64,000 nt of DNA from Macrostomum lignano (GCA_002269645.1 NIVC01001050.1:59683-123682); one strand, 5' to 3'. Shown: positions 19,621 through 64,000, numbered from the stretch's first letter. A program made the numbers and translations. The notes: generated by a model not told the origin, from the sequence alone.

Positions 19621-32357
<12,737 letters not shown>

Positions 32358-44672: not shown

Positions 44673-45251
44673 TCTACGGTGTAATTATTCTAAAAATCTA
44701 ATTATAATAATTATTCTATTTTTCTTTTCTGATATTTTTGTTCCTTTGAGATGAAATCGTCAATCCTCGCATCTATAAAAGGAATAATCCTGATGTAAAA
44801 CGCTTAATCCGCAAATCACAGTCGCATCTGTGACGGAAAACACCTTCAATTTTGTCCAGATTTTCCCAATCAGACCTAAGCAGATTGTCTTTGCCAATCA
44901 TTTCCTTGGGAAGGAAAATTCCAAAGAATAAAGTAATCCATTTGGCGTTTTTTTCCAAATGAAATGCTCAAAACGACGTGGGCAACCAATTATCACCTTG
45001 TAATCAGCGGATTAACAGGAGGAAAGCTGCTTTGCGCTGAAAAGATTTACTCCGCGAAAAAATTGCTATATAAAGGGCCTCTCGAATCTTTGCTGGACAT
45101 TTTCGCTGCAGATTTTGACACTGGCTACCGATAAACTGTTGGAGACCCAACTGGCCTGTTGAAGCTATACAACGGTTTTTAGCGTTATTAAAGAGTTGTA
45201 GAAATCTTTTTTTAATTGTTTAAACTAGTAAAACAACTTAAAAAATACATC

Positions 45252-46919
45252 ATGACTGCTAACGATACGGTTACCGAACTGGAGACTGCTTTTGAGCACC
45301 TACCAGCTCTGATCGACTCTGATCCCATTGTTTTCTATCCCTACGTGAGTCTGACTTCCCTCGCCATGGTCATTGGGTTTTTAGGCAATATCGCCATTTT
45401 TATTACCCTGTTGGCTCGGCCCGATGTGCAGAAGGTTGGCCGGGAGTTCATGGCCAACATGTGCTTGGCTGATCTGTGCGTCACTGGACTGGCCGATCCT
45501 CTGTGCATCGTTGGTGAGTTGCTGTTGCTATTGAACAGTGTATGTATAGGGTCAGAATTAACTGGCTGTCGTGTCCTATCTGCTCGAATCTCAGTTGATC
45601 TCAGTCTTAGGTGGGCCAACGATACACCATCCCTGGAGTCTTGGGTCTTAGGTGGGCCAACGATACACCATCCCTGGAGTCTTGGGTCTTAGGCGGGCCA
45701 ACGATACACCATCCCTGGCGTCTTGGGTCTTAGGTGGGCCAACGATACACCATCCCTGGCGTCTTGGGTCTTAGGCGGGTCAATGATGCATCGCTGGAGT
45801 CTTAGGGGTTTGATGGGTCAATGGTACATTGCTGGAGGCCTGTATTTTAGGTGGGTCAATGATGCATCACTGGAGTCTTGAGTCTTAGGCGGGTCAATGA
45901 TGCATCGCTGGAGTCGTGGGTCTTAGGCTATCCAAGACACGTCACTGGAGCTAGTTTTGGGTCTTTTGTGGGTCAAGGATACATCCATCAAGTCTTAAGT
46001 CTGGTAGGTCCAAGAAGACACGTCGCTGGAGTCACAATAACACACTGACATAGTACCTGAGACGCAGTCGAAACGAAGCTACTTGAATGTAAAAAGCGTC
46101 TCCGTTTCCCCTCCAGCTGCCATTAAAGGCGAAAAATATCTGACTGAGAGACCTGAACTTTGCACTCTGGTCGCTTCGCTGTGCCTGACAGCCTGCTTCT
46201 GCGCCTTCTTCAGTCTGGGCTGCATCACCGCATCCAGAACGGTATTCATCTGTCACAACCGAATGTACAAGAGCCTATTCAGCCGACGAAAGGCCATTGT
46301 GCAGTGCTGCCTGTGCTGGGTGCTGAGCCTGACAGCAGAGGCTGGTAACTTTCTCGGTTGGGGCGGCCATTTCTACGATCGGAAAAGCGAGAGCTGCGCT
46401 TGGCAGAGAACGGCGTCCTCGTCGTACACATTCTTTGTCGGCGTCGGTCTGATCTCTTTCCCGCTGACTCTGATGCTGGCCGCTAATATAAAAGTCCTAG
46501 TCAAGGTTCACTCTACAAAGCTTCGCCTTCTCGCCGCCGTCACGTCTCATCTGGACAAGCCAACGCCTCGACCAAGCGCTGTCTGGCGAGAGACAGCACG
46601 AGCTTGCCGAACATTGCTGGCTATGATCGTAGCCTTCTGCGTCTGCTGGATACCCTACACTGTTGTCATTCTGGTGGACGTCAGCAACACTGTGGTTCCG
46701 CCTCGGGTTCACCTGTTCGTAACTTGGCTGGCTCACCTGCATTCGGCTGTCATCATCTTGGTGCACCTGAGCAATCGGCAAATCCGGCTGGCAGTGATCC
46801 AAACCATCTTCTGCCAGCGCGACAAAGGATCGCCTAAGGCCAACACCGCGACTACCAAGTGCACAAACAACAGCAAAGCTACTAACCAGACCACCTCTAC
46901 CACCGATAACAAGATCTGA
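45252..46919 (+). CDS. Class A (rhodopsin-family) GPCR, melatonin-receptor-like orphan (~354 aa; exons 45252-45513, 46117-46919)
   Basis: Seven hydrophobic segments: TM1 GN, TM2 NMCLADL, TM3 end ASRTVFICH (compare melatonin receptor NRYCYICH), ECL2 YDRKSESC, TM6 FCVCWIPY. The phase-1 intron is G|GTGAG...CAG|CT. Confidence 0.85.
45600..46035. repeat. Minisatellite, ~41 bp unit TCTTAGGTGGGCCAACGATACACCATCCCTGGAGTCTTGGG, 4 near-perfect copies then degenerate, in the GPCR intron
   Basis: Directly visible. Confidence 0.9.
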
Positions 46920-47796: not shown

Positions 47797-50700
47797 TTAT
47801 ACCACTGTGGACTTTCTCGGTTCGTAATAGTAATTATCGTACTCGGATTCGTAGGCGCTGTACTGCATGCTCGGATCGCTCGGGTACTCGACGCTGGTGG
47901 CCAGAGAGCTGCTGCTGATGCAGCCGGGCAGGATGTAGCGCTGCAGCTCCGGCGGCAGGACGCTGCGCATTTTGCCGTGACGAGCCACGAACCGTTGGAA
48001 ACTTTGCGGCAGTCCGCGCGCCTGCCCATTAATGACGCCGTTTCGTGCGGCCAAGTCGGCCGCGTCGGCGTCGGCGCCTAGCTCCAGGGTAGCCGCGGCG
48101 GCGGCGACCGCCGACGCGTTGGCGACTGCGGCCTGCAGCTGATCGAGGCTCGATGCCCGTCGCAGGGCGCAATCTGGCGATGTTCCGTTGACAGCAACGG
48201 CCGACTGGTGCTGCAGCGGCTGTTGATGATGCATTCGGAAGCGAGGCTGACCCGGGGTCGAGTTCTGACCTCGACTGGCCCGGTCGAGCGAGCCGAACAT
48301 GGACAGGCCGCTGGATGGCCGAGTCCGATCGTGCGAGTTGCCCCGCTGAAGCGGCACTGGCAGCGCCTGCTGCTTCCCCTGCTGCTCTGTGGGCTGCATC
48401 GGAGCTAACAGCGCCGCAAGAGTCTGCCGGTGGCACAGCCGGTCGGGCACCTCGCCCTCGGATAAGTCTGCTCCGTCCGGCATGCAGAAGTCGCGCCGGA
48501 AGACGCTGCTAATTCGACGTGCCTCCGCGGCGATGCGCTCGTGAAAGCTGTCTTCCATGCCGCTGCCGATAGCAAACGGCAGACCGGCAGCTCGCAGCCG
48601 CTGCGGGAAGTCGGACTCGTCGGTCATGTTGTCGTAGTCGGACTTCTTGGATGCCGGCGTCGAAGTTGTGTCGTTCGGCGTCAGCGAGGAAGCTTGATGC
48701 GGCGGCTGCAACAGCCGGCCGAAGCCGTTCTGAAAGCCACCCCGGTGGCCGCTGTACCCGTTGTAGCCAAAGCTGCGCCTGAGCCCTGGCACATCTTCCG
48801 CCTCAGAGTGCGTTTCGTACGCGCTCGACGGAACATCGCACGAATAGCCAGCCTCCTCTTCATCTTCGTCATCCTCGGCTCTAGTTTCGTAGCCGTACTC
48901 GTCGAAGTCGGTGTCTCCGCCGTTGTCATATTCTCCAGTTTTCTGCCTGGGCTGGCGCGGTCTCGGAGCTGGCAATCTACGTCCGGCGTTCAATGGCGTC
49001 AGCAGGACTTCTCCGTCGCTTACTCTGCCAAGATCTTCGCTAGAGATGGCCACGCTTGTGGTGGAAGTCGGCGGTAAAAAGCCAAAGTTCGGCAGGCCAA
49101 CCGGCGCCACTTGCGGCAGCCGACGCTGCGCGGGTACCGGCGTCGGCGGCTCCGACCCGGGTGGAGGGTACGATGCCGTGACCGGAGGCTCGCAGTAGGA
49201 CGGGTCCGCGTCGGAGAGGGCGGCAGCGGCTGCCTCTTGTGGCCAGGCGCGCATCAGTGCTGCCTCTGGCTCTCCTGGTTCAATGTTTTTGGAGTTCATT
49301 GAACTATTAAATAACCGTTTCTTTACACACTATAATTTAAATAAAAAGGTAAGGTCATACCTGCATTGCAGTTCCCTCTAAATCGACTGTCACTACCGAT
49401 GTCGTTTGCCGCAGTTGCCGCTGTCGGTGTCTGCAGAGACGGCGGCGCCGACGGTCTGTACGCCTGCGGCACGTATTGGAAAAAGTTGGTGCAGTCCTCG
49501 TCGATGTCGCTCACCAGAACGTCGCTTATCTCGCCGTCGTCGCTCTGCAGGCCGCGAAGTGCATCCAGGTCTGTGTCGCAGCCGCCATCGCGACCGCCGC
49601 GACCGCTGACTCCTCCATCTGTGTTGTCATCCTCGTCACCGCTGGTCAGACACCCACCAATGGAGTCGGAGACCAGTGAAAGCAGCGAGTCGCCAACAGC
49701 CGCACCGCCAGACGCTACTCCGCCGATGCCACTACTTGAAGTCGTCGGTGGAGCTACTGGCGCCAGTCGGAACGCTCCGCTGCGTTCCTTGGCCAATCGA
49801 AACAGTACTGGAGGCACAGTAGAGCCGCTGCATGTGTTCGTCGTTTCCCAGCCAGTATTGGCGGCTGCGTTTGAACGCTGCGAGGGTTCTGCGCTGGTTG
49901 ATGTCGCGGACGCTGTAGAGATCGGTGCCTCAATTGGTGGAAGCGACAAAGTGGCCCCAGCCGTGTCTGATGGCGGTGAAGTCTTCAAGCCTCCAGCGCC
50001 GCAACGGCTTCCTCCAGAGGAGTCACTCAGCCGACTGGCTGGCGACAAGATCGGAGGACTCGGGCGGGTATACTCGGGGAAGTCTAGGTGACGGGCACTG
50101 GGCGTGCTGCGCTGGCTACCTTCGGCTGATGGGCTTGCTGAGGTGCGAGACTTTCCAGAAGCGCGAGCTGCGGCTACTGGCGGAGGAGGCCGGTATTGGT
50201 GCTGAGGCTGAGACTGGTGATGTCCACTGGTGTCGGAGTTCGATCGCGTCATGCTGGTGCTATGACCGTGACTGCCACGTGGAGGTCGCGGCGGAGGCGG
50301 CACGGGAGCCGATGACTTCACAGCCGCCATCTCCATGAAGATGTTGGCGCTACTCTCAGCCATAGAATCGTACTCAGTGTCAGTGTACAGCGGGTTTCTG
50401 TGGCTCACCGGCCCCGGCATCTCAGCAGAGGCGGTAGCCGAAGCGCTGACTGCAGCGGCGTTGTCCGTAGCCTCGGTTGCTACTTCATCTTCGTCAGAGG
50501 TGACAATCTGATCGAGCGTGTCACCCGGCGGATGCCTAGCCGCCGACTGAAAGGCGGCACTCTCGTGCATGAGGAAACTGCTCAGGGATGACCTACTGGC
50601 AACGGTGTCGCTAATTCTTCGAGGCCTCTGCGGCTTCTGCTGGTGAGGCTGCGGTTGAATCTGAGGCTGAAGTTGAGGTGGCGGAGGCGGCGGTGGCAGA

Positions 50701-53700
50701 GTCGGCGTCTGCGTTTCAGCAGCGACCACGCTCCGTGTGTGCGTCTCGGGTATCGGCTTGAGGCCGGAACCGCTGCCGCAGTGGGCAGAGTAAATGTTAT
50801 TGGAGACTCCGGCCTGTAGCACTGAGAAAGCTTCTTGTGGCGACTCTAGCGGGCTATTTTGTCGGCGGCTCGGGTGATGATGGTGTTGCTGACTGCCTTG
50901 ATGCTGACGGAAGCCCGTGGAATTTACAGTCACTTGAGAATTTCGGCTAGAGGACGTGGCCGGTCGGCCCTCGCGCAGCACCATGGCGCGAACTCGCAAG
51001 CCGTCAACGTTGTGCGACGAATGCTCGGTAAAGTCGAACTGCTGCTGAGCCACCCGGTGCACACGTTCGGACACTAGGATCTGTCCGGGACCGGCCGCTG
51101 AGGCCAGCACTTTCGAAATAGATGCTGCCTGGCCCCAGATGTCGAAAACTGGCCTGGAGCCGCCGACCACGCCGCAGAAGCCGGGTCCGAGGTCGATGCC
51201 AACCCGCATACGGATGCGATCCTCGTACAGTGTGGCGTTGAGTTCAGCCACCCTGCGGCGCATCAGCTGGGCCAGCTGAACCAGACCGGTGAGGTGGAAC
51301 AGCTTGCTGGCCGGGTTGTCCTGCAGTTGCGGATTCATGCCAACAGCTACTACATAGTTTTCCCCAACTGTGCGCACTTTGACGAGCTCCTGGTGTCGGT
51401 CGGCACGTTGAATTAGCTCGTCCAGCTCGCAGATGACGTCATTGAGCACCCGGATGCTCTCCTGGACAAGCAGGGGAGCCTCAGTGCCAGGAGCTGGCTG
51501 CCAATCCGGTAGATTGGCCCACAGGATGCCCAGCAGCTGGTACTCTTGGGCGTACAGATCCTGTGTTGGCGAGAGACGTTAGGGGAGGGCATCAAAAGAG
51601 CACACAAAGGCGCACGGATATGCAGGCAAAAATCCACAGGATGTACAGACGGCCCTGACTTTCTCATTGGCAGGCATTTCTCACTCTGTGACCTGGGGCT
51701 TTGGCCCTCATGGGCGATTTTTCGTGCCAAACGTCAGGTAAATTTTTTCACGAGCCTCAAATTTGTGTGGCCCAGGTACTTTGGTGCCTGGAGTCAAACG
51801 CCTTAACCCCTGAGCTTCTCTGTCAGTAAAAACGGTTTTCTAGCTTTTTGCTAAATTCCTACGCACTCCACATCCCTCTGGCTCCCTGCTGCACAGGTCG
51901 AAACTCGAAGGCTTTCCCGGCTTCAGCCCAGCATACTCCCAACTGGGGAACCGAAGTTATGACTGCTACCGAAACCGCGCGCGTCAAACTCCCAAATCCC
52001 CCAGCCATAGTGAAGTTTTCTCCTCTCCAGCTAGCTCTGATGACTCACCCAAGCTCGAATGCGGGCACGCGAGGCACGCGCGGATATGCATATATTGATG
52101 AGGAATCGGGCAAGTTTTTCCTATAGTTCCGCGTCGCTTTTTTCGGCTTCATTCCCTGCGCAACAACCGGTGGCAAACCCCCACCGGCACTCGGTGGCAG
52201 GGGCAGGCTTTGGCTTTGGCATGCCCCATCCATCAAGGCATTCGGTAAGGTTTGCTGGGCCAGAGTGGATGAGGGGAGGGCATTTCGGGCCTCTAGTGCG
52301 ACGCTTCGTCGTTGCGCGTCGGAGTATTGCTTATAATAATGCGTGGCCTGGCAACTGACCTCGAGTCTGTGCAACCCTCTCTATCTGTGTCTCTTATTCT
52401 ATCAATATACACTACATGCCAAGTTTCCTATGTAAATATGAATAAGCTGTCTATGAATAAATTTGTCAGAAAAAATCGAGCTCCTATTTTTCTGGTGAAT
52501 TGCACTTGACGTTACACTCGAATAGGATATTTCTATCATTGCTGAAGTTGGGAGCTATCAGCTGATTTTAATAGATTAGATTAATTAAGTGAAACCCGCT
52601 ACCAGCTGTACTCACCACAGGATTTCGATAAGTCGTATCCGTGAAATGCAGCGCAACGTGCTGCGGCAGCAGATTTTTCAGCAAACAGCAACTGGCCTCC
52701 TTCACCAGGAACATGTCGTGCTGGTTCTCGGCGGACTGAAAAAATATTTGTTAAAAATGAAAGAGAATGATTCGATTTGGGCTGTACGAGGGTTGTAAGT
52801 CTGCTAAGTAGAAACGTTGATTTTTCTATTAAAAAGAAAATCTTTGCAAAATCCTCAATTAAAACACAACAGAATTGTGTTTTGAATTTTGAATTTACCA
52901 CAGGAGAAGCAAATATGTGATTCATTTGCTATTCAGGATCGGCAAACTCCGGCCCACAAAGCTTTTCTATCCGGCCCTCGGGTCCTTTGAAACTTCACAA
53001 TGGCAATCTGGGCCGCTCAGGGTTTGTGTCGCTTCTCAGCTCCCTACTCTCTAATCTCCTCCCTCTCCTCTCCTATTCCATCTTCTAATGGGCAGATGTG
53101 CAACCGACAGCTCGAGCCCGAGTAAATCTGAAGGTTGCGTACGGCTGTTCAGTCCAAAGAACCCCTAGAATTTCTCCAGCTAATGCTGGCACCCATTTTA
53201 CAGCTGGGTAAACTGAAGCAATGCAGAGTTAAGTGCCTTGCTCAAGAAGTCAAGGACTATAGATTGTTACGAGTAGGTCGAGAATGAAACCCCGGACCTT
53301 TCAGTCTCAATTCCGTCGCTCTAGCCACTAGGCTAAAACTCTAGGCTATAATGGAAGCTCACCTGCGACTTCCACTGGAACTCCTGTCGCTGGGCGAACT
53401 CGTGAAACCGAGAGTGCACGAAGATCAAGATGGAGAAAGCGGTCAGGCAGACGAGGCCCCAGACAAAGGTTGGCACAGGGCCAGCTGACATGTCGTGAGC
53501 GGAGGCGGCCAGACCGGACAGACTCGCCAGCCCTCTGACATCGGAGTCAACCAGCGAGAACAGCGGACGATGCGTGACAGCTACAGTCAGGCCGAAGGTG
53601 GTGGACACGGCCACGAGCAGGAACAACTTGATGAAGGAGGGCAGCGATGCGAACACAGCCACCAAGATCAGGCAGAGGGTGCCAGACAGGTAAATGAAGT

Positions 53701-56700
53701 CCGGCAGCGGGCACTGCAGCTCCAGTGAGTTGTCCGAGTCCTGCAGAATCGGGCCGTACGTGGTCCTGTTGCCCACTGTCGAACGGCAGCAGAACTGAAA
53801 ACCGATGCCAAATAATCAATAAATTCGGTTGACAATCCTAAAACCAGCTCCAGCCCAAGCCCGACAGCACTAAACGCCAGCTCAGCTCACCACATTGGCC
53901 TGCGATACGGCGTACACAAACAGAACCGAAGTAATGATGACAACCACTCGTATGACGAATGAGCTCTGAATGTTGAATTCCAGGCACTGTCGATTGGAAA
54001 TTGGTTGTTTTCACAATTACTGCATTGTGTACAGTGAATGTAGATTCTTTCACGCGTGACTTAATAATCACCAATGAAATTGTTCAATTAATCTCTGAAT
54101 AGTTGATAGGGCGCATAAATATCTACAAGGTAATAGATTAAAGTAACTGCCATTCAATATCTCATAGCCCAGTGGTCCAACTCGGCGCTCTGATGTGCCA
54201 GCGGCCCAGGCTCGATTTCAAGTGCAGTCACATTAATTTGGGGCTGAATTGGAATCTCGGCTTGGCTCTGCTCGTGCAATTAACACCTTTGAAGGCCAAC
54301 CCTAAGGACAGTGAAGTGTACATGACTAACGGTAAATAAAGTTAGGGCCGCTGTACACTCTTGTGTGAGTGTGTGCCTGTGCGTATGACTGCGTACGTAT
54401 CCGCGCGCTTGTGACATAACAAGCCATCCGTTCAAGGCCTTCAAATCTGGGACAAGATAGGTGCATGGAGCGGTTCATTGGAGTCAAACTCAAACTTGAT
54501 TTGAATTTGCTCACCTTAAGCCTGGCAGCCAGCAACACCATGAGCATCATGCCAATCCAGGTGAACGCAATCATGAATAGCAGCAATAGCAGCATGGTTC
54601 TAAAATGGGGAAGGGTTCATTAATAATTAATTAAAACAGCTTTTAACAGCATCTCTACATTTGAATCGGTAAGTTGGAATTTTCTCCGCGAAGAGCTCAC
54701 CTGGGCAGCACTGAAGCCTGAAGGCTGGCGCTAATTAGCAAAATGAAAAGGGCCGCTAGCATTGCCGCTCCGAATGTGTGATCCTCCTGTCTGTGGTACT
54801 GGAATTGTTTGTTTGAGTTTTCAGTTGCAATGTATTTAGCGAATAAATTCCAAGCAAAATGAATGACATCATTTCGTCGTTTCTTTGTACTGTTTAGGGC
54901 GAGACAGATTCAAACGATTATTTTATTCGGTTGTTATGCAGTTGCTGTGGGGTTGCTAAGCGGTTGCTATACGGTTGCTATGCGGTTACTATGCGGTTGC
55001 TATATTGTTGCTATGCAGTTGCCATACGGTTGCTATGCGGTTGCGATGCGGTTGCGATGCGGTTGCTATGCTGTTGCTTTGAGGTTGCTGAGATAGCTGT
55101 TTCTATCTCATTACTGTTTACGAGTTACGTAGTTACAATGCGGTTGGTACACGGTTGCTATGCGGTTGCTATGCTGATTGCTTTTTCATTACGTTTCTCG
55201 CTTGCTGTACAGTTGCTACGCGGTTGCTACGCCGATGCTTTGTGATTGCTATGCGGTCGCTATGCGGTTGCTATGCTATTTCTACGCAGTTGCTATGCGA
55301 TTTGCTAAGCTGTTGTCAAGACTGAATTTCGAATTCTTAAACAAAAGCTATAACCAAACTTTCGGTTCGAGTTCAACTTAAGCACTCCTGCTCACCTCAT
55401 TCTCTTTAGCCTGAGTTGAGAACTTCAGCGTCACCGGGTTCATGCTGGTTCGGCAGCGCCTCAGCACGGTTGTTGAGGCGCCGCTAGCAGCTACTTGACC
55501 ACCGCAGCCTGAAGAGGTCGACGAAGTCTTGACGCTGCCCAGGCGGGTGAGTTCGGTGCCTTTGAACGAAGCCGCGTGCCCGTTCCCAATGAGAGGACTG
55601 GAGCTGCCACCGGAACTCCTGCTGCGAGGGTGGGTTCGAATATGTACTTTTACAATTTGTTCGAATACATTTTCCACGAGTTGTTAGGATTCTTACATTT
55701 TTCCTGAGGGCTGGCACTTCAGAAGTTCCTCGGTCAGCTTCTGAAAGATTTGTTAACATTTAAACTTGTGAAGTTTTTACACAAATTGATAGATAGAGGC
55801 CAGCAGATCGAATTTAAGATGAGTTGGGTCAACTGACCTCCCCTATAGATAATTATATTGGGGTCAACTGACCTTCGCAATAGTTAACTAAATTGAAAGT
55901 GAAGTGACCTCTCCTTTAGGTTATTATCTTGGGGTTCAAATGACCTCCCCTATAGATTATTAGATTGGGGTCAACTGACCTCCCTTTAGAAAATTCGATT
56001 GGGGGGTCTACTGACCTCCCCTATAGATTATTAGATTGGGGGTCAATAATTAGATTGACCTACCCCATAGATTTTTAGGTTCGGGGTCCCCTAAAAATGG
56101 AGTCAGCTAAACTTCGCAATGGAAGTTCGATTAGAGGGTTGGTCAACTGACCACTCTATTGACGATTTTCACTGAAAATTCAACTGACCAGCTGTCAGAG
56201 TAGTCAATCAGCTGATTACTCAGCTTTGCTAAAAAAACTTGATCAAGTGCTTGCAGCCCGGTAATTACCATTCGCTGAGCCTGGTTGACTTTAGTCTCGC
56301 CAATGTACTGGAACGGCGATTCGCACTGGTGATTGGCGAACTGGCTCAACCGTCTGAGTCCTTCGGTCCGCTCCCCGTCGTCCAGATGATGCTGCTGTCT
56401 CGAGCTGCTCTTGGATGACTGCAATAGAAGAAGACATTGTAGGAAGAAATTTTAGCTCCAATAGTTTCCCCGAAGGTTGCTATGCGGTTGCTATGCGGTT
56501 GCTATGCGGTTGCTACGCGGTTGCTACGCGGTTGTATGTTGTTGCTATCCGATCACTCTTCGGTTACTATGCGGTTTCTATGCGGTTTCTATGCGGTTGC
56601 TATGCGGTTGCTATGCCGTTTTTTGCGGTTGCTATGTGGTGCTATGCCGTTGTTTTGTGGTTGTATGTTGTTACTATCCGATCACTCTGCGGTTACTATG

Positions 56701-59700
56701 CGGTTTCTATGCGGTTGCTATGCGGTTGCTATGCCGTTTTTTTGCGGTTGCTATGTGGTTGCTATGCCGTTGTTTTGCGGTTGTATGTTGTTACTATCCG
56801 ATCACTCTGCGGTTACTATGCGGTTTCTATGCGGTTTCAATGCGGTTACTATGCGGTTGTTATGTTGTTGTTCTGCTCTTGCTGGCATTGCTATGCGGTC
56901 GCTGTGGTTGCTATATGGTTGCTATGCTATTTCTTGACTTTATAGTGTAAATCGACTCATTATACCTAGTTCCCGTTACTAGGTATCTCGCCGAACTTAA
57001 AAAAATCAGTGGGCAACCCTTCATCTTCTCTCTGCTCCAACTCACGGACATGAGCTGCCGCGGCCGAACAATCACGGTCTCCAGTTTAGTTCGAACGCCG
57101 CCGTTCGCGCCCGGCCGATCCAGCAGGGGCCCGGGTTCGACTCTCAGGTCGGCGTCCGCCAGCTCCAGGTAGGTCGACTTAGACAGAAGAATGCGCCTGG
57201 TAGAGGAGAGGCTGACTGGTGAGGCTTGCGCTTCGAACTCACCCTTGCAATGAATTTAAGAATCTCACCTTTGATTCTGGATCAAGGGCTTTCAAAATCC
57301 CTCTGACCAAAATTGAAAAACAGAGATAAGTTTTGAGATCTCACGCCTTAGATAACCTTGGGTGTCTCTCACTCTGAGATGAATTTAGAAATCTCACCCT
57401 GAGAATAATTTAGAAATCTCACCCTGGGATTAATTGAGAAATCTCACTCTTGAGATAAACTTAGAAATCTCACCCTGAGAAGAATTTAGAAATCTCACCC
57501 TTGAGATAAACTTAGAAATCTCACCCTGGGAAGAATTTAGAAATCTCACCCCTGAGATTAATTGCGAAATCTCACCCCTGAGATTAAATTAGAAATCTCA
57601 CCCTGAGAAGAATTTAGAAATCTCACCCTTGAGATAAACTTAGAAATCTCACCCTGGGAAGAATTTAGAAATCTCACCCCTGAGATTAATTGCGAAATCT
57701 CACCCCTGAGATTAAATTAGAAATCTCACCCTGAGAAGAATTTAGAAATCTCACCCTTGAGATAAACTTAGAAATCTCACCCTTGAGATAAACCTAGAAA
57801 TCTCACTCTTGAGATAAAATTAGAAATCTCACCCTGAGAAGAATTTAGAAATCTCACCCTTGAGATAAACTTAGAAATCTCACCCTGAGAATAATTTAGA
57901 AATCTCACCCTTGAGATAAACTTAGAAATCTCACCCTGAGAAGAATTTAGAAATTTGCTATTCTCACCCTGAGATAAATCTAGAACTATCACTGAGGAAT
58001 ATCTAAATTCCACTTTCTAAACTTAATTCAATTCGCCCAGCTGTAGACTGTATGACAGCTCACCCAGGCGGGCAGGCTTGCAGGAGGCGCCTGGCTATGA
58101 CCACTTGCTCGCCCATGACGTCATAGGTGAGCCGGCATTTGCCCAGCAGGGCGGCGTAAGCTACGCCCGAGTTGATGCCCACTCTGGCCTCCAGGGGCAG
58201 CTGTGAGCACTCGGAGAGATTCCTGCAAAATTGGGGGGGGGCGGAGTCGAACCATGGATCAAGGCTCAAGAGTCACCTGGGAGGTAAGTTGCGAATGCAC
58301 TAAAGATTCGGCCTGTTTTACACAGAATATTCATAAAGCTTGCAGTGATTAAACTGCAGAGCAAATATCAAGTCCGAAGCCTAGGGATCATCTGATCCCC
58401 GTACAAGCTGATGGCTCATATCCTGTATATACAACCCAGACCTGTAATGGATTCCGATTCATTAACCCCAACCCCGGTCCATGCAGCAGGTGCGTGGAAA
58501 AGCCTTAACTACAAGTCTGTAACATCTGCTGTGCAGTCAGTAGGATTAAGCTAAACAGGCCTGGATTACACAGGATTAATCCTGCCGCAATTAAAACTCG
58601 CCCAATATTCGAGACTGACAATCCTCAAGCCTTCCCCTAGAAGCAGATAGCTATTGCCAGCGGCGGCACTCTGTATACATAGTTAGAAATAGTAACTGTG
58701 TCTTATCAAGTATAGCCATATGCCTGAAATAAGTTCCTAGGCTTTCTTTTACAAGCCGAATCAGTTTTGGGATGGTGAAGGAAAGAAAGAGGCTGAGGGC
58801 AATGCGTTGAGTGTGGAGTTTTGGGGTAAAAAATCCATAGTGGAGAGGCTGGGGAGCTGCTTGTGGCTGTGCTGGTTGCAGCCGTCTTTTGCTTGGAATA
58901 TCGAACGGTGCGGAACTTGTTGCTTCTCCTTGGTTGCCCCTGCATTGCTTGCTCTGCTCTTTTCCCTCCTCTCACTCTCATCTCTCCCCTCATCTCTCCC
59001 TCTCATCTCTGCCCTCATCTCTCTCCTCATCTCTCCCCTCATCTCTCCCTCTCATCTCTGCCCTCATCTCTCTCCTCATCTCTCCCCTCATCTCTCCCTC
59101 TCATCTCTCCCTCTCATCTCTCCCTCTCATCTCTCCCTCTCATTTCCCCCTCTCATTTCTCCCTCTCATCTCTCCTTCTCATCCCTTCCCCAATCTCTCC
59201 TTCTCTTTTCTCCGTCACATCCCTTTCCTAATCTCTCAATCTCATCAATCCCAATGATCTCCTTCTCATCTCTCTCTCGCGTCTCTCCCTCCCGCAGTAG
59301 CTGCCGCCAGCTCACCCGATCATTTCCAGCAGAACCTGGCCAAAGCGGACAGCCAGAGTGGTGTGCTCGGTGCACTCGTGCGGGAACCCGATGGCGGCAG
59401 TGTACTCGTCGCCCTGGATTCGAACTCGGAACGCTTGATGCTCCTGCAAATGGATTATCGGGCTGGCTTTGAGTGCTCCTGTGCTCTCTGAGAGATGCTG
59501 TGTTGTCTCCCTGCTTTTCTCCACTCTCCCTCCCTTCATCTCTCCCGCTCTCCCTTCATCTCTCTGCTCTCGCTTTATCTCTCTGCTCTTCCTTAATCTC
59601 TCTACTCTCCCTTCATTCATCTCTTCGCTGTCCCTCCTCAATCTCTGTGCAATTTTGATTTACTTAGACCCAAAAAGTACGGCTCATGATTTCTCAAACT

Positions 59701-62700
59701 CAGCTAGCATAATTGACGCAAATCTTTAGCCATGTTGCATTTGCAAAAACCCATTCTGCACTGGCCAATTCATGCAAAAAAACTTTCTATTCAAGTTTCT
59801 AAAGAACCTCCCACAGCACACAACACCCAGTCAGCCCCTCGGCAATTTGGATGACTCATCGCTGCTGCACTTCAAGCGGTCACTACCGCGCACAGACATA
59901 CGCAGGCAAATGCCATTTGCAATTTCTCTCTAAACCCTTTATTTGCTAAGCTGTCTTCGATATCTGCATACAACTGGCGAGATGAACTGCCGACAACCCT
60001 CCGGTTATTAATCCATGTTTAGCATCGATTTATTACTGACTGTGACAGCTTCCACTGCCGTCTTTAGCTCTGTTTTCTGGCAAACAGTATTGTATCCTGC
60101 AGTGTTTTGTCACTTACGTAGGCTAATTGGTCCAGCCGACAGAACACCTGATTCATCAGCTTCACCGCGTCTGAGGCTGGGAAGCTGGCCGGGAACTTGG
60201 TGAGGCCAGAGATGCTGGCGCACATCAGGCTGCGGGGCGGTTGGTTGCTCCTGTGTGAGCGGTTTGTCTCAGTGTCTGGTCTAGTGTCTTAGTGTCTGAT
60301 CTAGCGTTTGTCTTAGTGTCTGCCTTAGTGTCTGTCTTAGTGTCTGATCTAGTGTCTGTCTTAGTGTCTGATCTAGTGTCTGTCTTAGTGTCTGATCTAG
60401 TGTCTTAGTGTCTGTCTTAGTGTCTGATCTAGTGTCTTAGTGTCTGATCTAGCGTTTGTCTTAGTGTCTGTCTTAGTGTCTGTCTTAGTGTCTGATCTAG
60501 CGTTTGTCTTAGTGCCTGATCTAGTGTCTTAGTGTCTGTCTTAGTGTCTGATCTAGTGTCTTAGTGTCTGTCTTAGTGTCTGATCTAGTGTCTTAGTTTC
60601 TGTCTTAGTGTCTGATCTAGTGTCTTAGTGTCTGTTCTAGCGTTTGTCTTAGTGTCTGTCTTAGTGTCTGATCTAGTGTCTTAGTGCCTGATCTAGTGTC
60701 TGATCTAGTGTCTTAGTGTCTGATCTAGTGTCTTAGTGTCTGATCTAGCGTTTGTCTTAGTGTCTGTCTTAGTGTCTGTCTTAGTGTCTGATCTAGCGTT
60801 TGTCTTAGTGTCTGTCTTAGTGTCTAATTTAGTGTCCTAGTTCCTGTCATAGAGTCTGATTTAGTGTAGTTTTGTCTGTCTTAGTGACTGTCTTAGTGAC
60901 TGTCTTAGTGCCTGTCTTAGTAACTGTCTTAGTGACTGTCTTAGTGCCTGTCTTAGTGTCTGTCTTAGTGTCTGGTTTAGTGTCTGGTTTAGTGTCTTAG
61001 TTCCTGTCTTAATGCTTGTTTTAGTGTCTGTCTCGTCGCCTGTCTGACTGTCTTCTTGTCTATCTACCCGTCTGTCTTTCTTTCCGCCCAAGCTCCCTGT
61101 CCCCTTGAAGTCCATCACCCAGAGTCCCAACCTCATGTACGGTGTCTGGTTGACCTGGGCCACCTTCCAGCCGAAGTTGCCATGCAGACAGTCGGCCCGC
61201 ATGTCGTCCGTCAGGTCGGAAGGCACCACAGACTGCACCAGGCGTTCCTGTGGGAAGAGAAATGCACTGAGGTTGCGGTCTTGTTGCTATGGGGGGTTTG
61301 GGGGGCTCTCTGGGGCTGGTAAGGCAACACATGACGCTTGAAGTGAAGCGAACAGCAGTGCTGGTGCGCCATACCTCTTCACGGAGCCTGCAGTTTGGAC
61401 AGTCATCGGCTAGACTTTTATAGCTAATTGCAGCCTCAGCAGTGCGGAGACTTAGAAATTCCAATAATTTATAGCATAGCCTTGAATCTGCAGCCATACG
61501 CAGGTCCCAACTCGAAATTTTATAACTGAAATTCCAACTAGCAAATTGGCCTTTCAGTTTCTCAGCCATGGTTACTCTATCCTGAAACCCATTCCTTAGA
61601 TTGAAGAAATCCTAAACTACCTTGGAGCATTCAGAACCATAGCCTATACCAGCTTAAGTCTCTATCTTCAATATTATGATCCCAAATCCCCGTTCTACAT
61701 TATGATCCCAAATCCCTATTCTACATTATGATCCCAAATCCCTGCTCTACATTATGATCCCAAATCCCCGTTGTACATTATGATCCCAAATCCCTGTTCT
61801 ACATTATGATTCCAAATTCCTATTCTACATTATAATCTAAAATCCCTATTCTACATTATGATCCCAAATCCCTGTTCTACATTATGATTCCAAATTCCTA
61901 TTCTACATTATAATCTAAAATCCCTATTCTACATTATGATCCCAAATCCCTATTCTACATTATGATCCCAAATTCTTATTCTACATTATGATCCCAAACT
62001 CTTATTCTACATTATGATCCCAAATTTCTATTCTACATTATGATCCCAAATTCCTATTCTACATTATGATCCCAAATCCCTATTCTACATTATGATCCCA
62101 AATTCTTATTCTACAATATGATCCCAAATTCCTATTCTACATTATGATCCCAAATTCCTATTCTACATTATGATCCCAAATTCCTATTCAACATTATGAT
62201 CCCAAATCCCCGTTGTACATTATGATCCCAAATCCCCGTTGTACATTATGATCCCAAATCCCTGTTCTACATTATGATCCCAAATCCCTGTTCTACATTA
62301 TGATCCCAAATCCCTATTCTACATTATGATCCCAAATCCCTATTCTACATTATGATCCCAAATCCCTATTCTACATTATGATCCCAAATTCTTATTTTAC
62401 ATTATGATCCCAAATTCTTATTCTAAATTATGATCCCAAATTCCTATTCTACATTATGATCCCAAATTCCTATTCTACATTATGATCCCAAATCCATGTT
62501 CTACATTATGATCCCAAATCCCCGTTGTACATTATGATCCCAAATCCCCGTTCTACATTATGATTCCAAATTCCTATTCTACATTATGATCCCAAATCCC
62601 TGTTCTACATTATGATCCCAAATCCCCGTTCTACATTATGATCCCAAATCCCAATTCTACATTATAATCTAAAATCCCTATTCTACATTATGATCCCAAA

Positions 62701-64000
62701 TCCCTGTTCTACATTATGATCCCAAATCCCTGTTCTACATTATAATCCCGAATCCCCGTTCTACATTCTAATCCCAAATCCCCATTCTATATTCCAATCC
62801 CAAATCCTAAATCTACATTATAATCCCAAACCCCAATCCACTTCATGATCCAAGAATTTATTAATTTAAATTGACTCACTCAGTCGGCACATCGAACTAT
62901 CCAGTGTCACGATGTACTTTAAACGTAAAAGCCAACAAATAATTTGAAATCCAATCCATTCTGAGATGCAATGCCCAAATAACTGAAAAAAGATTTCTCT
63001 TTTTGTAGGAGACGAGATTTCGACGTCATATCAGCTGCGGACCGCTGGTCAGATCCCTTCTCCCATGAGACACGACGAAAATTGTCCCCAAAGTACCGCT
63101 GCACCAGACTCTCAGCTGCATCATTGCGAACTCAAAATCTAGAGAGACAGATTCTATCCCCTGTCTGATTAGGAGGAAACAGATTTATCCTCATTTGTAA
63201 AGTGCAACCCCCTTGGAGACGAAATGTACTTTTAGACACATCGGTTCCTCATCAATCCCTTACTAGCTTGCTCCCGTTCAATCAATCTTGCACTCCCACT
63301 GGGGGATGAGAAAATCCCCTTTTTCTTTAGGGAAAAAAGTTTGAAAGTCTGACTTAACAGCCGAATTTTTGTCACCTTTATTTGCTCTATGCTTTCTGCT
63401 GCTTTTTCTGGCTGTACTCTTGTAGGAGAAACAATTAATGCTGTTTATAAGAGATACAAGATAATCCCATTATTGATAAAGTTTATGGAATAGCGTATAG
63501 TGTAATAATTCCCATTTCCAGATCCCCAAGATTCCCGATTCTATAATTTTAATGTCTAGATCCTCAAATTCATAATCCCTATAATCAAGTCCTAAATTTC
63601 ATAATTCCCATAGCCAGATCCCCAATTTCATAATTCCCATATCCAAATCCCCAATTTCATAATTCCCATATCCAAATCCCCAATTTCATAATTCCCATTT
63701 CCAAATACCAAATTTCATAATTCCCATATCCAAATCCCAAATTTCATAATTCCCATATCCAAATCCTCATTTTCATAATTCCCATATCCAAATCCCCAAT
63801 TTCGTAATTCCCAAATCCAAATTCCCAATTTCACGATTCCCATATCCAAATCCCCAATTTCACAATTCCCATATCCAAATCCCCAATTCCATAATTCTGC
63901 CTAGCAACTAGCTCACCAGCTTGTAGGTCTCGTCCTCCAACTGCAGCTGATTGGCGATGCAGGCCTTGGTTTCCAGGAAACTGCGGCGCAACAGGCTGTC
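47797..64000 (-). CDS. Transmembrane adenylyl-cyclase-like protein, predicted catalytically impaired; 5' part outside the window (>1,890 aa visible; exons 64000-63917, 61247-61132, 60229-60118, 59443-59316, 58222-58064, 57196-57046, 56418-56269, 55740-55697, 55621-55396, 54798-54701, 54599-54515, 53986-53891, 53794-53363, 52735-52616, 51560-49361, 49274-47797)
   Basis: Sixteen phase-consistent GT-AG exons give the class III tmAC order: RRSFLETKACI...ERLVQSVVP (post-TM6 coiled coil), C1a (SLMCASISG...RVRIQGDEY...RVGINSG...YDVMG), C1b (MNPVTLKF), six TM helices, LLKNLLPQHVA, C2a (VLNDVICELDEL...KVRTVG...RVGIDLG...FDIWG), then a long low-complexity tail. The last acceptor (49274) is chosen to keep the frame and is the least certain junction. 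Confidence 0.85.
52935..53010 (+). mobile_element. Probable end of a non-autonomous hAT/Charlie-like element; a 34-bp core is shared with 37531-37564
   Basis: CAGGATCGGCAAACTCCGGCCC resembles hAT MITE termini (CAGGGGTCGGCAAACT.CGGCCC). CCCTCGGGTCCTTTGAAACTTCACAATGGCAATC occurs identically at 37531 and 52975. Confidence 0.45.
53060..53335 (-). mobile_element. tRNA-derived CORE-SINE (MIR-like core)
   Basis: The minus strand has an A box TAGCCTAGTGGCTAGAGCG and a B-box-like GGTTTCATTCT. These are followed by CTTGAGCAAGGCACTTAACTCTGCATTGCTTCAGTTTACCCAGCTGTAAAATGGG, which aligns by eye to the MIR core CTTGGGCAAGTTACTTAACCTCTCTGTGCCTCAGTTTCCTCATCTGTAAAATGGG. Confidence 0.75.
54165..54413 (+). mobile_element. 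tRNA-derived SINE, copy 2 (same family as 24086-24335)
   Basis: A box TAGCCCAGTGG and B-box-like GGCTCGATTTC. The body aligns to the reverse complement of 24086-24335. Confidence 0.75.
54925..55310. repeat. Degenerate 11-bp tandem repeat TATGCGGTTGC (array 1, cyclase intron)
   Basis: Directly visible. Confidence 0.9.
55800..56160. repeat. Degenerate ~41-bp tandem repeat GGGTCAACTGACCTCCCCTATAGATTATTAGATT..
   Basis: About 7 diverged copies are visible. Confidence 0.75.
56474..56930. repeat. 11-bp tandem repeat TATGCGGTTGC (array 2) with higher-order ~120-bp duplications
   Basis: Directly visible. The interruption TATCCGATCACTCT recurs three times. Confidence 0.9.
57370..57980. repeat. Minisatellite, ~24-25 bp unit AGAAATCTCACCCTGAGAAGAATTT
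   Basis: Directly visible. Confidence 0.95.
58970..59180. repeat. Pyrimidine-rich tandem repeat (CTCATCTCTCC)n
   Basis: Directly visible. Confidence 0.9.
60270..61030. repeat. 10-bp-based tandem repeat (TTAGTGTCTG / CTAGTGTCTG..)n
   Basis: Directly visible. Confidence 0.95.
61676..62850. repeat. Minisatellite, 27 bp unit TTCTACATTATGATCCCAAATCCCT(A/G), ~43 copies
   Basis: Directly visible. Confidence 0.95.
63590..63895. repeat. Minisatellite, 25 bp unit CATAATTCCCATATCCAAATCCCCAATTT-like, ~12 copies
   Basis: Directly visible. Confidence 0.9.

What the first reader, a model, noticed from the sequence alone, without database searches (positions are those of the whole stretch)
51060..61247. 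Candidate pseudo-adenylyl cyclase: key catalytic residues substituted in an intact, fully spliceable gene
Seen in sequence: C1a reads YM-S-L-M-C-A-S-I-S-G where canonical tmACs have S-I-L-F-A-D-I, so the first Mg2+-binding Asp (ACV D396) is Ser. The second Asp is kept (RIQGD). C2a reads DIWG-QAASISKV where the canon is DIWG-NTVNVASR, so the catalytic Asn (ACII N1025) is Ser and the transition-state Arg (R1029) is Val. The adenine-specifying Lys of KIKTIG is Arg (KVRTVG). Established knowledge: these residues are required for class III cyclase catalysis. The gene nevertheless keeps 16 in-frame exons with no stops, both C domains and the six M2 helices, which points to selection on a non-enzymatic role. 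Inference: it may be a membrane pseudoenzyme acting as a dominant-negative partner, G-protein or nucleotide sensor, or scaffold. Caveat: a Lys one residue before the lost Arg might partly compensate.
Basis: partly seen in the sequence, partly recalled or inferred. Interest (0 to 1): 0.85.

Follow-up and report, generated by a model that had tools for sequence, protein, structure and literature searches.

The report
Flatworm adenylyl cyclase lacking catalytic residues
A membrane adenylyl cyclase gene of the flatworm Macrostomum lignano (rutabaga/AC1 type) has lost most of the residues needed to make cAMP, yet it is transcribed, intact in two genomic copies and under purifying selection, so it is probably a natural "dead enzyme" kept for a non-catalytic job.

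Summary
The gene lies on the minus strand. It is Macrostomum lignano BOX15_Mlig003700g1 (PAA72950.1 / A0A267FGN4, 2225 aa), auto-named "adenylate cyclase". These seven positions are 96-99% invariant in the relatives, and no other animal sequence in the set has more than two changes.

The gene runs from beyond the window end (the M1 exon is outside) to a stop at 47797, with a 1025-aa tail.

It is not a decaying pseudogene. All splice sites are canonical, and the GenBank model is RNA-seq-derived. A second locus (g2) differs by 27 synonymous and 10 non-synonymous changes (dN/dS 0.12, p=1e-9).

The catalytic domains are about 28% identical to AC1/rutabaga orthologues, which share 70-75% with each other. 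The M2 membrane domain keeps normal orthologue-level identity (36% vs 40%), and a C-terminal AYESEYDNY motif is retained.

Best reading: a selected pseudo-cyclase derived from the AC1/rutabaga lineage. Inactivity and its actual role are untested. No orthologue from another species was found, so the age of the loss is unknown.

The parts
63917..64000 (-). Coding exon 2 (3' 84 nt). It encodes the post-M1 helical/coiled-coil segment DSLLRRSFLETKACIANQLQLEDETYKL. The exon starts 66 nt beyond the window end.
   Evidence: Donor CTG|GTGAGC. Upstream part seen in locus L002. Weak Pfam AC_N match.
61132..61247 (-). Coding exon 3: ERLVQSVVPSDLTDDM...QTPYM(S), the lead-in to C1a.
   Evidence: Acceptor CCCACAG|GAA, donor AG|GTTGGG. 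Aligns to AC5/AC8 'erlllsvlprhva'.
60118..60229 (-). Coding exon 4: C1a first metal-binding motif, SLMCASISGLTKF. The Ser replacing Asp396 is codon AGC at 60216-60214 (P0151 S406).
59316..59443 (-). Coding exon 5: EHQAFRVRIQGDEYTAAIGFP. The second metal Asp (D440 equivalent, P0151 D450) is retained at 59410-59408.
58064..58222 (-). Coding exon 6: RVGINSGVAYAALLG...YDVMGEQVVIARRL. The R484 equivalent is Val, but this position is variable in relatives. The forskolin-pocket motif WS is MG, and the near-invariant Asn of 'LAN' is Arg.
57046..57196 (-). Coding exon 7: end of C1a (RILLSKSTYLELADADLRVEPG...).
55396..56418 (-). Coding exons 8-10 (56418-56269, 55740-55697, 55621-55396): C1b linker. Exon 10 has a tandem NAGNAG acceptor, giving ...SGK-IR-SSGG or ...SGK-M-SSGG.
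   Evidence: The two variants are seen in P0151 vs P0155/P0001.
53363..54798 (-). Coding exons 11-14 (54798-54701, 54599-54515, 53986-53891, 53794-53363): M2 membrane domain, TM7-TM12, followed by the FQWKSQ cyclase-transducing helix.
   Evidence: The exon 13 acceptor was corrected to 53986 to match the annotated 'CLEFNIQ'. M2 is 36% identical to AC1-like orthologues, with BLAST E values from 1e-26 to 1e-42.
52616..52735 (-). Coding exon 15: second helical domain, SAENQHDMFLVKEASCCLLKNLLPQHVALHFTDTTYRNPV.
49361..51560 (-). Coding exon 16: the whole C2a domain (51560-50961) plus the first 533 aa of a low-complexity tail. Key codons: K938→R at 51374-51372, D1018 kept at 51143-51141, N1025→S at 51122-51120, R1029→V at 51110-51108, K1065→D at 51005-51003.
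   Evidence: Pfam Guanylate_cyc 4.5e-23. PDB AC8 2.5e-26..
47797..49274 (-). Final coding exon 17: the remaining 491 aa of the tail, ending ...ISSSSLATSVEYPSDPSMQYSAYESEYDNYYYEPRKSTVV* (stop TAA at 47799-47797). The C-terminal motif is conserved in spiralian AC1-like proteins.
   Evidence: Phase-1 splice GCAG|GTATGA ... AACCAG|GA. The junction is confirmed by the annotated proteins P0151 and P0001. Motif alignment.

Best explanation
This is the Macrostomum lignano member of the AC1/rutabaga-type (Ca2+/calmodulin-responsive) membrane adenylyl cyclase orthogroup. It keeps the full 6TM-C1-6TM-C2 architecture and a long C-terminal tail.

Its catalytic centre has been dismantled:
- One of the two Mg2+-binding Asp residues of C1 is Ser.
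- In C2 the ribose/transition-state Asn and Arg are Ser and Val, the gamma-phosphate Lys is Asp, and the adenine Lys is Arg.

The protein is therefore most likely unable, or nearly unable, to make cAMP. This is an inference from sequence and from mutagenesis of mammalian ACs.

The gene is nevertheless transcribed, correctly spliced, present in two near-identical loci and under purifying selection (shown here). Constraint has shifted. The catalytic domains evolved about 2.5 times further than in orthologues. The M2 membrane domain, the helical transducer segments and a C-terminal AYESEYDNY motif are kept at or near orthologue level.

The most likely mode of action (inferred, not shown) is a non-catalytic membrane signalling protein. 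It would still form the C1-C2 pseudo-dimer and the TM bundle, and it would act through protein-protein or ligand interactions. Candidate mechanisms are titrating Gs-alpha or other AC regulators, or joining AC-containing complexes, as the engineered dead AC6 D426A does.
For: Identity:
- My spliced model is 100% identical over 1885 aa to PAA72950.1 / A0A267FGN4 of M. lignano.
- Pfam finds AC_N plus two Guanylate_cyc domains.

Catalytic residues:
- The HMMER alignments to AC8, AC5 and AC9 structures are gap-free at the motifs.
- Across 139 relatives the signature is DD|KDNRK, against SD|RDSVD here.
- The definition of the key residues comes from Table 1 of PMC6005667.
- A single Asp→Ala in the AC6 core is described as rendering it catalytically inactive and dominant-negative (PMC5540275).

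No rescue:
- No other AC-like exon or canonical motif occurs in any frame of the window.
- The pseudo-symmetric site is also incomplete: N and E at the metal positions of C2, V at the Asn position of C1.

Expression and splicing:
- The GenBank annotation of Mlig_3_7 is built from RNA-seq/StringTie transcripts (PMC5730564), and it equals my splice-consensus model.

Selection:
- g1 vs g2 shows 27 synonymous and 10 non-synonymous differences, dN/dS 0.12, binomial p=1.4e-9. For aa 1-1201 alone dN/dS is 0.15, p=0.001.
- CDS divergence is 0.55% against about 3.1% in introns.

Shifted constraint:
- C1a is 27.6% and C2a 29.1% identical to 11 AC1-like orthologues, which share 74.6% and 69.2% with each other. 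M2 is 36.4% against 39.8%.
- M2-only BLAST is bimodal and picks the AC1-like/rutabaga group.
- The tail motif is shared with Owenia, Tubulanus, Haliotis and Octopus AC1-like proteins.
- Half (44 of 88) of the columns at least 90% conserved in relatives are kept, mostly Gly and core residues, so the fold is probably retained.
Against: - No enzyme assay exists. Some bacterial class III cyclases with non-canonical residues are reported to be active (my recollection, not checked here).
- K938→R is conservative. D440 and D1018 persist, and a Lys sits next to the lost Arg.
- The selection signal covers only the very recent past (dS 0.016). It has no power for the catalytic domains alone (2 synonymous, 2 non-synonymous differences).
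- No orthologue from another Macrostomum species or other flatworm was found. It is therefore unknown how old the loss is, and whether M. lignano also has a canonical AC1-like paralogue.
- Expression is inferred from the annotation method. I did not see reads, and no expression data for Mlig003700 were found.
- The g2 locus carries a 1-bp deletion in the tail exon. This is probably an assembly error, because P0155 from the older assembly has g2-type substitutions and is in frame. That explanation is not proven.
- The proposed mode of action is analogy only.
Confidence: 0.7

Rival explanations
1. It is still an adenylyl (or other nucleotidyl) cyclase that works with an unorthodox active site. 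One route is Ser406/Asp450 plus the neighbouring Lys. Another is a role-swapped second site, where C2 now offers Glu ('GENY') and C1 offers Arg ('IARR').
For: - D440, D1018 and an Arg at the K938 position are retained.
- A Lys precedes the lost Arg1029.
- The pseudo-symmetric site has gained an acidic residue in C2, which is E in only 1 of 139 relatives. It also has an Arg at the R1029-equivalent position of C1, seen in only 8 of 139.
- Purifying selection is compatible with an enzyme.
Against: - Five of seven near-invariant catalytic positions are changed at once, a combination seen in none of the other animal tmACs sampled.
- The second site lacks one metal ligand (Asn) and the ribose-binding Asn (Val), so neither site is complete.
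- The catalytic domains as a whole have lost half of their highly conserved columns, while M2 has not diverged more than usual. This is the opposite of what constraint on catalysis predicts (PMC9552081).
Confidence: 0.15
2. It is a redundant duplicate drifting towards a pseudogene. The intact frame would reflect only the youth of the decay.
For: - M. lignano is a recent polyploid with much gene redundancy (PMC5730564).
- The catalytic domains are extremely diverged.
- The g2 copy shows a 1-bp deletion in the tail exon.
Against: - The 28% identity in the catalytic domains implies a long history since the loss of constraint on catalysis. Even so, 2225 codons remain open, and all 15 introns in the window keep GT-AG.
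- The synonymous to non-synonymous ratio of 27:10 differs from the neutral 1:3 expectation at p=1e-9.
- Exons are about 5 times less diverged than introns.
- M2 and the tail motif are conserved at orthologue level.
- The gene model derives from transcripts.
Confidence: 0.06
3. The substitutions are artefacts of assembly, annotation or mis-splicing, and the real mRNA encodes canonical motifs.
For: Mlig_3_7 is a PacBio-based, repeat-rich and redundant assembly. Some predicted isoforms (P0001, P0155) contain mis-modelled exons.
Against: - The same motifs occur in two independent loci (window and L001) and in proteins predicted from the older ML2 assembly (P0155, P0158).
- The substitutions lie inside exons, away from the junctions.
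- No alternative exon with canonical motifs exists in the window.
Confidence: 0.02

Closest known systems
AC1 / rutabaga-type Ca2+/calmodulin-responsive transmembrane adenylyl cyclases of protostomes (e.g. Drosophila rutabaga; 'adenylate cyclase type 1-like' of Tubulanus, Haliotis, Octopus, Owenia, Lottia)
   Same: - Same architecture: N-terminus, 6TM, C1, 6TM, C2, long tail.
- These proteins are the best hits for C2, M1 and above all M2 (E values from 1e-26 to 1e-42).
- They share the C-terminal IS.SS..SDP..AYESEYDNY motif and the 'CLEF(D/N)' loop after TM8.
   Different: - All of them carry the canonical DD|KDNRK catalytic signature, and their catalytic domains are 70-75% identical to each other.
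- The M. lignano protein has SD|RDSVD and only about 28% identity there.
- Ca2+/CaM regulation was not examined.
Engineered catalytically inactive AC6 (Asp426→Ala, 'AC6mut')
   Same: It is a full-length tmAC with a metal-binding Asp removed. It has biological effects without making cAMP, and its authors suggest it acts as a dominant negative for Gs-alpha (PMC5540275). This is the best functional analogy.
   Different: It is a laboratory point mutant of an otherwise canonical enzyme. The flatworm protein is natural, carries five substitutions and has a broadly remodelled catalytic core.
Naturally half-degenerate class III cyclase domains (the C2 domain of every tmAC; the sGC beta subunit; the forskolin pseudo-site)
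   Same: The flatworm C1 motif 'CASISG' looks like a C2-type 'FASIPNF' motif. In effect both halves now resemble the non-metal-binding partner (residue table in PMC6005667).
   Different: In those cases the partner domain supplies the missing residues, so one complete site remains. Here neither of the two possible sites is complete.
Mastigamoeba balamuthi 'putative adenylate guanylate cyclase' (P0118, EP00727_P013246)
   Same: It is the only other protein among the 139 relatives with a multiply degenerate C2 signature (A-E-T-Q-E), and it is even more diverged.
   Different: It is an amoebozoan protein and keeps both C1 Asp residues. It is unrelated in lineage, so this is independent degeneration.

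Membership tests
Transmembrane (class IIIa) adenylyl cyclase family | Architecture: N-terminus, 6 TM helices, C1 cyclase-homology domain, 6 TM helices, C2 cyclase-homology domain | tested here: met
   - Pfam finds two Guanylate_cyc stretches (2.6e-51) and AC_N.
- PDB hits are AC8 at 1.8e-39 (C1) and 2.5e-26 (C2).
- Six M2 helices were located.
- M1 is in exon 1 outside the window.
Transmembrane (class IIIa) adenylyl cyclase family | Two metal-binding Asp residues in C1 (AC5 D396, D440) | tested here: not met
   Ser406 and Asp450. The first position is D in 131/133 relatives.
Transmembrane (class IIIa) adenylyl cyclase family | Transition-state/ribose Asn and Arg in C2 (AC2 N1025, R1029) | tested here: not met
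   Ser1147 and Val1151. Relatives have N in 138/139 and R in 136/139.
Transmembrane (class IIIa) adenylyl cyclase family | Adenine-specifying Lys-Asp pair in C2 (K938, D1018) | tested here: inconclusive
   Arg1063 and Asp1140. Lys is found in 138/139 relatives. Arg is conservative, but its effect is unknown.
Transmembrane (class IIIa) adenylyl cyclase family | Gamma-phosphate Lys in C2 (K1065) | tested here: not met
   Asp1186, against K in 133/137 relatives.
Transmembrane (class IIIa) adenylyl cyclase family | Converts ATP to cAMP | not testable with these tools
   This needs an enzyme assay of the recombinant protein.
AC1 / rutabaga orthogroup | Isoform-specific membrane domains and tail | tested here: met
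   - M2 is 36.4% identical, against 39.8% among orthologues.
- M2-only BLAST separates about 15 AC1-like/rutabaga proteins (1e-26 to 1e-42) from all the others.
- The AYESEYDNY tail motif is shared.
AC1 / rutabaga orthogroup | Ca2+/calmodulin stimulation (CaM-binding site in C1b) | not tested
   The C1b region is low-complexity and poorly alignable, so no attempt was made.
Pseudoenzyme (general definition) | Homologue of an active enzyme that lacks key catalytic residues | tested here: met
Pseudoenzyme (general definition) | Expressed and maintained by selection (not a pseudogene) | tested here: met
   dN/dS is 0.12, p=1.4e-9. Exons are more conserved than introns. The annotation is transcript-derived, which is indirect evidence for expression.
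Pseudoenzyme (general definition) | Demonstrated lack of catalytic activity together with a demonstrated other function | not testable with these tools
   Requires biochemistry and genetics in M. lignano.

The most novel reading that the evidence does not exclude
The gene could be a natural separation-of-function variant of a membrane adenylyl cyclase. Evolution has discarded cAMP synthesis but kept the 12-helix membrane domain, the transducer helices and a conserved tail motif under selection. That would imply that the tmAC membrane anchor and tail have an autonomous, cAMP-independent function, as a receptor, an interaction hub or a regulator of other ACs or G proteins. If so, it is the first natural pseudo-tmAC described in an animal, and it sits in a flatworm that can be made transgenic and subjected to RNAi.
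Probability: 0.3. Interest if true: 0.75.

Novelty: new variant of a known kind. Interest (0 to 1): 0.55.

Why it matters
Across tmAC isoforms the catalytic domains are normally the only conserved part. The role of the membrane domains, about 35% of the protein, is an acknowledged open question (PMC9552081, PMC12414865).

This gene inverts that pattern. Its catalytic core is remodelled and lacks essential residues. Its M2 domain and a tail motif remain at orthologue-level conservation, and the gene is under purifying selection.

If the protein is indeed inactive, it offers a natural handle on cAMP-independent functions of adenylyl cyclases in an animal where transgenesis and RNAi work. So far such functions are known mainly from engineered AC6 mutants.

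There is also a practical point. Databases currently name the protein 'adenylate cyclase', and that label is probably a functional over-annotation.

The finding rests on one species and on sequence inference only, so it is a good lead rather than a result.

Tried and rejected
1. The search for homologous proteins was run three times: with C2 alone, with the full model and with the core. The word index returned only the species' own proteins and two weak bacterial-type hits. No orthologues from other flatworms could be obtained this way.

I used the single-exon C2 domain instead.

3. AlphaFold2 on the C2 exon as a single sequence gave mean pLDDT 43. The model is unusable, so no fold search was run. 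A C1·C2 heterodimer model could not be submitted under the input rules.

4. Role-swapped active site: considered and rejected, because the second site is also incomplete.

5. Alternative or mutually exclusive exon restoring FADI or NxxxR: none found by tblastn or motif scan in six frames.

6. R484→Val as further evidence of inactivity: rejected, because that position is Arg in only 33 of 139 relatives.

7. Literature: there were no papers using 'pseudocyclase' or similar terms. No paper mentions Mlig003700. No hit was found in the supplements of two M. lignano expression papers.

8. A trematode AC among the hits (Opisthorchis, P0104) turned out to be AC9-like. It says nothing about the flatworm AC1 lineage.

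Full report
**What is there**

The finding lies in a eukaryotic, intron-rich, repeat-rich gene on the minus strand. The open frames in the interval match the Pfam adenylate/guanylate cyclase catalytic domain. They also match solved mammalian AC8, AC9 and AC5 structures: E=2.5e-26 for C2 and 1.8e-39 for C1.

I built a splice model by hand from the three minus-strand frames. All 15 introns inside the window are GT-AG, most with GTGAG donors, and the phases are compatible.

The model is 100% identical over its 1885 residues to GenBank PAA72950.1 / UniProt A0A267FGN4. This is 'hypothetical protein BOX15_Mlig003700g1', auto-named 'adenylate cyclase', 2225 aa, from the flatworm Macrostomum lignano, contig NIVC01001050.1. 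Two small differences remain. One is a NAGNAG acceptor at exon 10. The other is an exon 13 acceptor that should be 53986 rather than my first choice of 53965.

The GenBank annotation of this assembly was made from RNA-seq-guided transcript assemblies, not ab initio prediction (PMC5730564). The junctions are therefore indirectly transcript-supported.

**Extent of the gene**

- Upstream, 61247 is the start of coding exon 3.
- Exon 2 is at 64000-63917 and is cut by the window end.
- Exon 1 (N-terminus and M1, 312 aa) lies outside the window.
- Downstream, the C2 exon runs on to 49361. After an 86-nt intron, a last exon reaches the stop at 47797. This gives a 1025-aa low-complexity tail with no Pfam domain.

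**The observation**

All residue calls are correct.
- C1 reads MSLMCASISGLT where AC5 and AC8 read VSILFADIEGFT, so D396 is Ser.
- RIQGDEY keeps D440.
- C2 reads KVRTVG (K938→R) and FDIWGQAASISKV against YDIWGNTVNVASR. D1018 is kept, N1025 is Ser and R1029 is Val.
- The alignments have no gaps at these motifs.
- I add K1065→Asp (NVDG for NVKG).

These eight positions are the accepted catalytic set (Table 1 of PMC6005667).

I extracted C1 and C2 from the 150 best representatives of a full HMMER scan of 1.8 billion proteins and aligned them. Among 139 relatives, the seven positions D396, D440, K938, D1018, N1025, R1029 and K1065 are each conserved in 96-99% of sequences. The flatworm protein is the only animal sequence with more than two changes. 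Its signature is SD|RDSVD against DD|KDNRK. The only other multiply degenerate protein is from the amoebozoan Mastigamoeba.

The eighth residue, R484, is Val here. That position is Arg in only 33 of 139 relatives, so I do not count it.

**Could something rescue catalysis?**

- No other cyclase-like exon and no canonical 'ADIxGFT' or 'DIWG..VN.ASR' motif exists in any frame of the window.
- The pseudo-symmetric second site has an unusual Glu in C2 (GENY) and an Arg in C1 (IARR). It still has Asn at the other metal position and Val at the ribose-Asn position, so it is incomplete too.
- A Lys replaces the usually conserved Ser just before the lost Arg. It does not address the loss of D396, N1025 and K1065.
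- Replacing a single Asp in the catalytic core of AC6 (Asp426→Ala) is described as rendering that enzyme catalytically inactive (PMC5540275).

**Pseudogene or selected gene?**

A second locus, BOX15_Mlig003700g2 (PAA60032.1, contig NIVC01002201.1, locus L001), carries the same gene.
- Exon-by-exon alignment gives 31 substitutions in the 5679 coding bases within the window.
- Over the whole CDS there are 27 synonymous and 10 non-synonymous differences: dS 0.016, dN 0.002, dN/dS 0.12. The binomial probability under neutrality is 1.4e-9.
- For residues 1-1201 (N-terminus to C2) the ratio is 0.15, p=0.001.
- Introns differ by about 3.1% in gap-free blocks, against 0.55% for the CDS.
- All copies, including proteins predicted from the older ML2 assembly, keep the degenerate motifs.
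- g2 has a 1-bp deletion in the tail exon. P0155, which carries g2-type substitutions, is in frame there, so an assembly error is likely.

The test reaches back only to the recent duplication, and it has no power for the catalytic domains alone (2 synonymous, 2 non-synonymous differences).

**What kind of cyclase it derives from**

The best non-self hits are only 26-31% identical in C2. All the named top hits are AC1-like, AC8 or 'Ca2+/calmodulin-responsive (rutabaga)' cyclases of insects, molluscs, a nemertean, an annelid and a spider.

The membrane domain settles the assignment. A BLAST with M2 alone is bimodal. About 15 AC1-like/rutabaga proteins score E values from 1e-26 to 1e-42, and everything else is far weaker. 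The last 45 residues carry a motif, IS.SS...SDP...AYESEYDNY, shared with the AC1-like proteins of Owenia, Tubulanus, Haliotis and Octopus.

**The striking pattern**

I compared the protein domain by domain with 11 AC1-like/rutabaga orthologues.

| Domain | Mlig vs orthologues | Orthologues among themselves | Ratio |
|---|---|---|---|
| C1a | 27.6% | 74.6% | 0.37 |
| C2a | 29.1% | 69.2% | 0.42 |
| M2 | 36.4% | 39.8% | 0.91 |
| M1 | 25% | 37% | 0.68 |
| Helical segments | 32% and 36% | 70% and 62% | 0.45 and 0.58 |

Overall, the catalytic domains are 27% identical (median) to the 139 relatives, which share a median of 53% with one another. Of the 88 columns that are at least 90% conserved in relatives, the protein keeps 44. 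These are mostly glycines and core residues, which suggests the fold survives.

A general fast clock in flatworms cannot explain a domain-specific acceleration. The usual rule is that only the catalytic domains of tmACs are conserved (PMC9552081). That rule is reversed here.

**Most likely mechanism**

Shown here:
- The gene is a tmAC orthologue with a dismantled active site.
- It is intact, its model is transcript-derived, and it is under purifying selection.
- Constraint is concentrated on M2, the tail motif and the fold.

Inferred:
- It cannot make cAMP at a useful rate, and it acts non-catalytically.

The closest functional precedent is the engineered AC6 D426A. It has cAMP-independent effects, and its authors think it competes for Gs-alpha as a dominant negative. 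The best-kept stretch of C2 is LNDVICELDEL (LNEIIADFDEL in canonical ACs). From my recollection of the Gs-alpha·C1·C2 structures, this stretch is part of the Gs-alpha groove. That is a lead, not a test.

The alternatives are a receptor or interaction-hub role of the TM bundle, which is an open question for all tmACs (PMC12414865).

**Novelty**

The protein is already in databases, but only as an automatically named 'adenylate cyclase'. I found no paper on it, nor any paper describing a natural pseudo-tmAC. I rate it a new variant of a known kind, a pseudoenzyme member of the tmAC family.

It rests on one species, and neither inactivity nor function has been tested. Interest is 0.55.

**Limits**

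- No orthologue from another flatworm could be retrieved with the tools.
- The single-sequence AlphaFold model was unusable.
- No expression values were found.
- It remains unknown whether M. lignano also has a canonical AC1-like gene. None of the top representatives shows closer M2 similarity than those of other phyla, which argues against a recent duplicate.

Noticed in passing
window 45216-46919 (+): A rhodopsin-family GPCR gene (Pfam 7tm_1, 1.8e-22) lies convergent to the cyclase-like gene. It ends about 880 bp from the cyclase stop codon. The first exon-like ORF at 45216-45692 has no Pfam hit but looks like TM1-2. Whether the adjacency means anything is unknown.
   Followed up: partly
window 54924-55315, 55826-56046, 56475-56927, 57367-57954, 58964-59291, 60265-61033, 61673-62834, 63560-63897: Most large introns of the gene are filled with mini- and microsatellite arrays (periods 11, 13, 24-36 and 51 nt, with up to 65 copies). 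The arrays differ in length between the g1 and g2 loci. For example, the intron at 63916-61248 is 2669 nt in g1 and 1725 nt in g2, while the flanking exons are nearly identical.
   Followed up: partly
L001 about 22150 (corresponds to window about 49425), tail exon: The g2 copy has a 1-bp deletion (GACACCGACAG to GACA-CGACAG). It truncates the annotated g2 protein to 1738 aa. A protein from the older assembly with g2-type substitutions (P0155) is in frame there, so this is probably an assembly error. A real frameshift removing the last roughly 500 aa of the tail in one copy is not excluded.
   Followed up: partly
window 55621-55616 (exon 10 acceptor): A tandem NAGNAG acceptor (CGCAG|CAG|GAG) is present. 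Database proteins show both products (…SGK-IR-SSGG… and …SGK-M-SSGG…), suggesting alternative 3-nt splicing or alternative modelling.
   Followed up: no
window 29274-31004 (+): An intronless 576-aa ORF encodes an AMP-binding enzyme of the acyl-CoA synthetase/luciferase type (Pfam AMP-binding 6.6e-51 plus AMP-binding_C).
   Followed up: no
window about 41450-42907 (+): A TRAF-like gene. Its last exon encodes a MATH domain (1.9e-32). The annotated 571-aa product also has RING and zf-TRAF domains.
   Followed up: no
window 13369-15877 (+): Three exon-like ORFs with Major Facilitator Superfamily matches. This is probably one multi-exon MFS transporter gene.
   Followed up: no
P0118 (Mastigamoeba balamuthi EP00727_P013246), not in the window: This 2280-aa amoebozoan tmAC-like protein keeps both C1 Asp residues, but its C2 catalytic set is entirely replaced (K→A, D→E, N→T, R→Q, K→E). 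It appears to be an independent case of a degenerate two-domain cyclase.
   Followed up: no
L002 6317-6319 vs L001 (exon 1, outside the window): There is a 3-bp (one Gly codon) in-frame indel between the g1 and g2 copies, in the Gly/Arg-rich N-terminal region (GGRGGGRS vs GGRGGRS).
   Followed up: no
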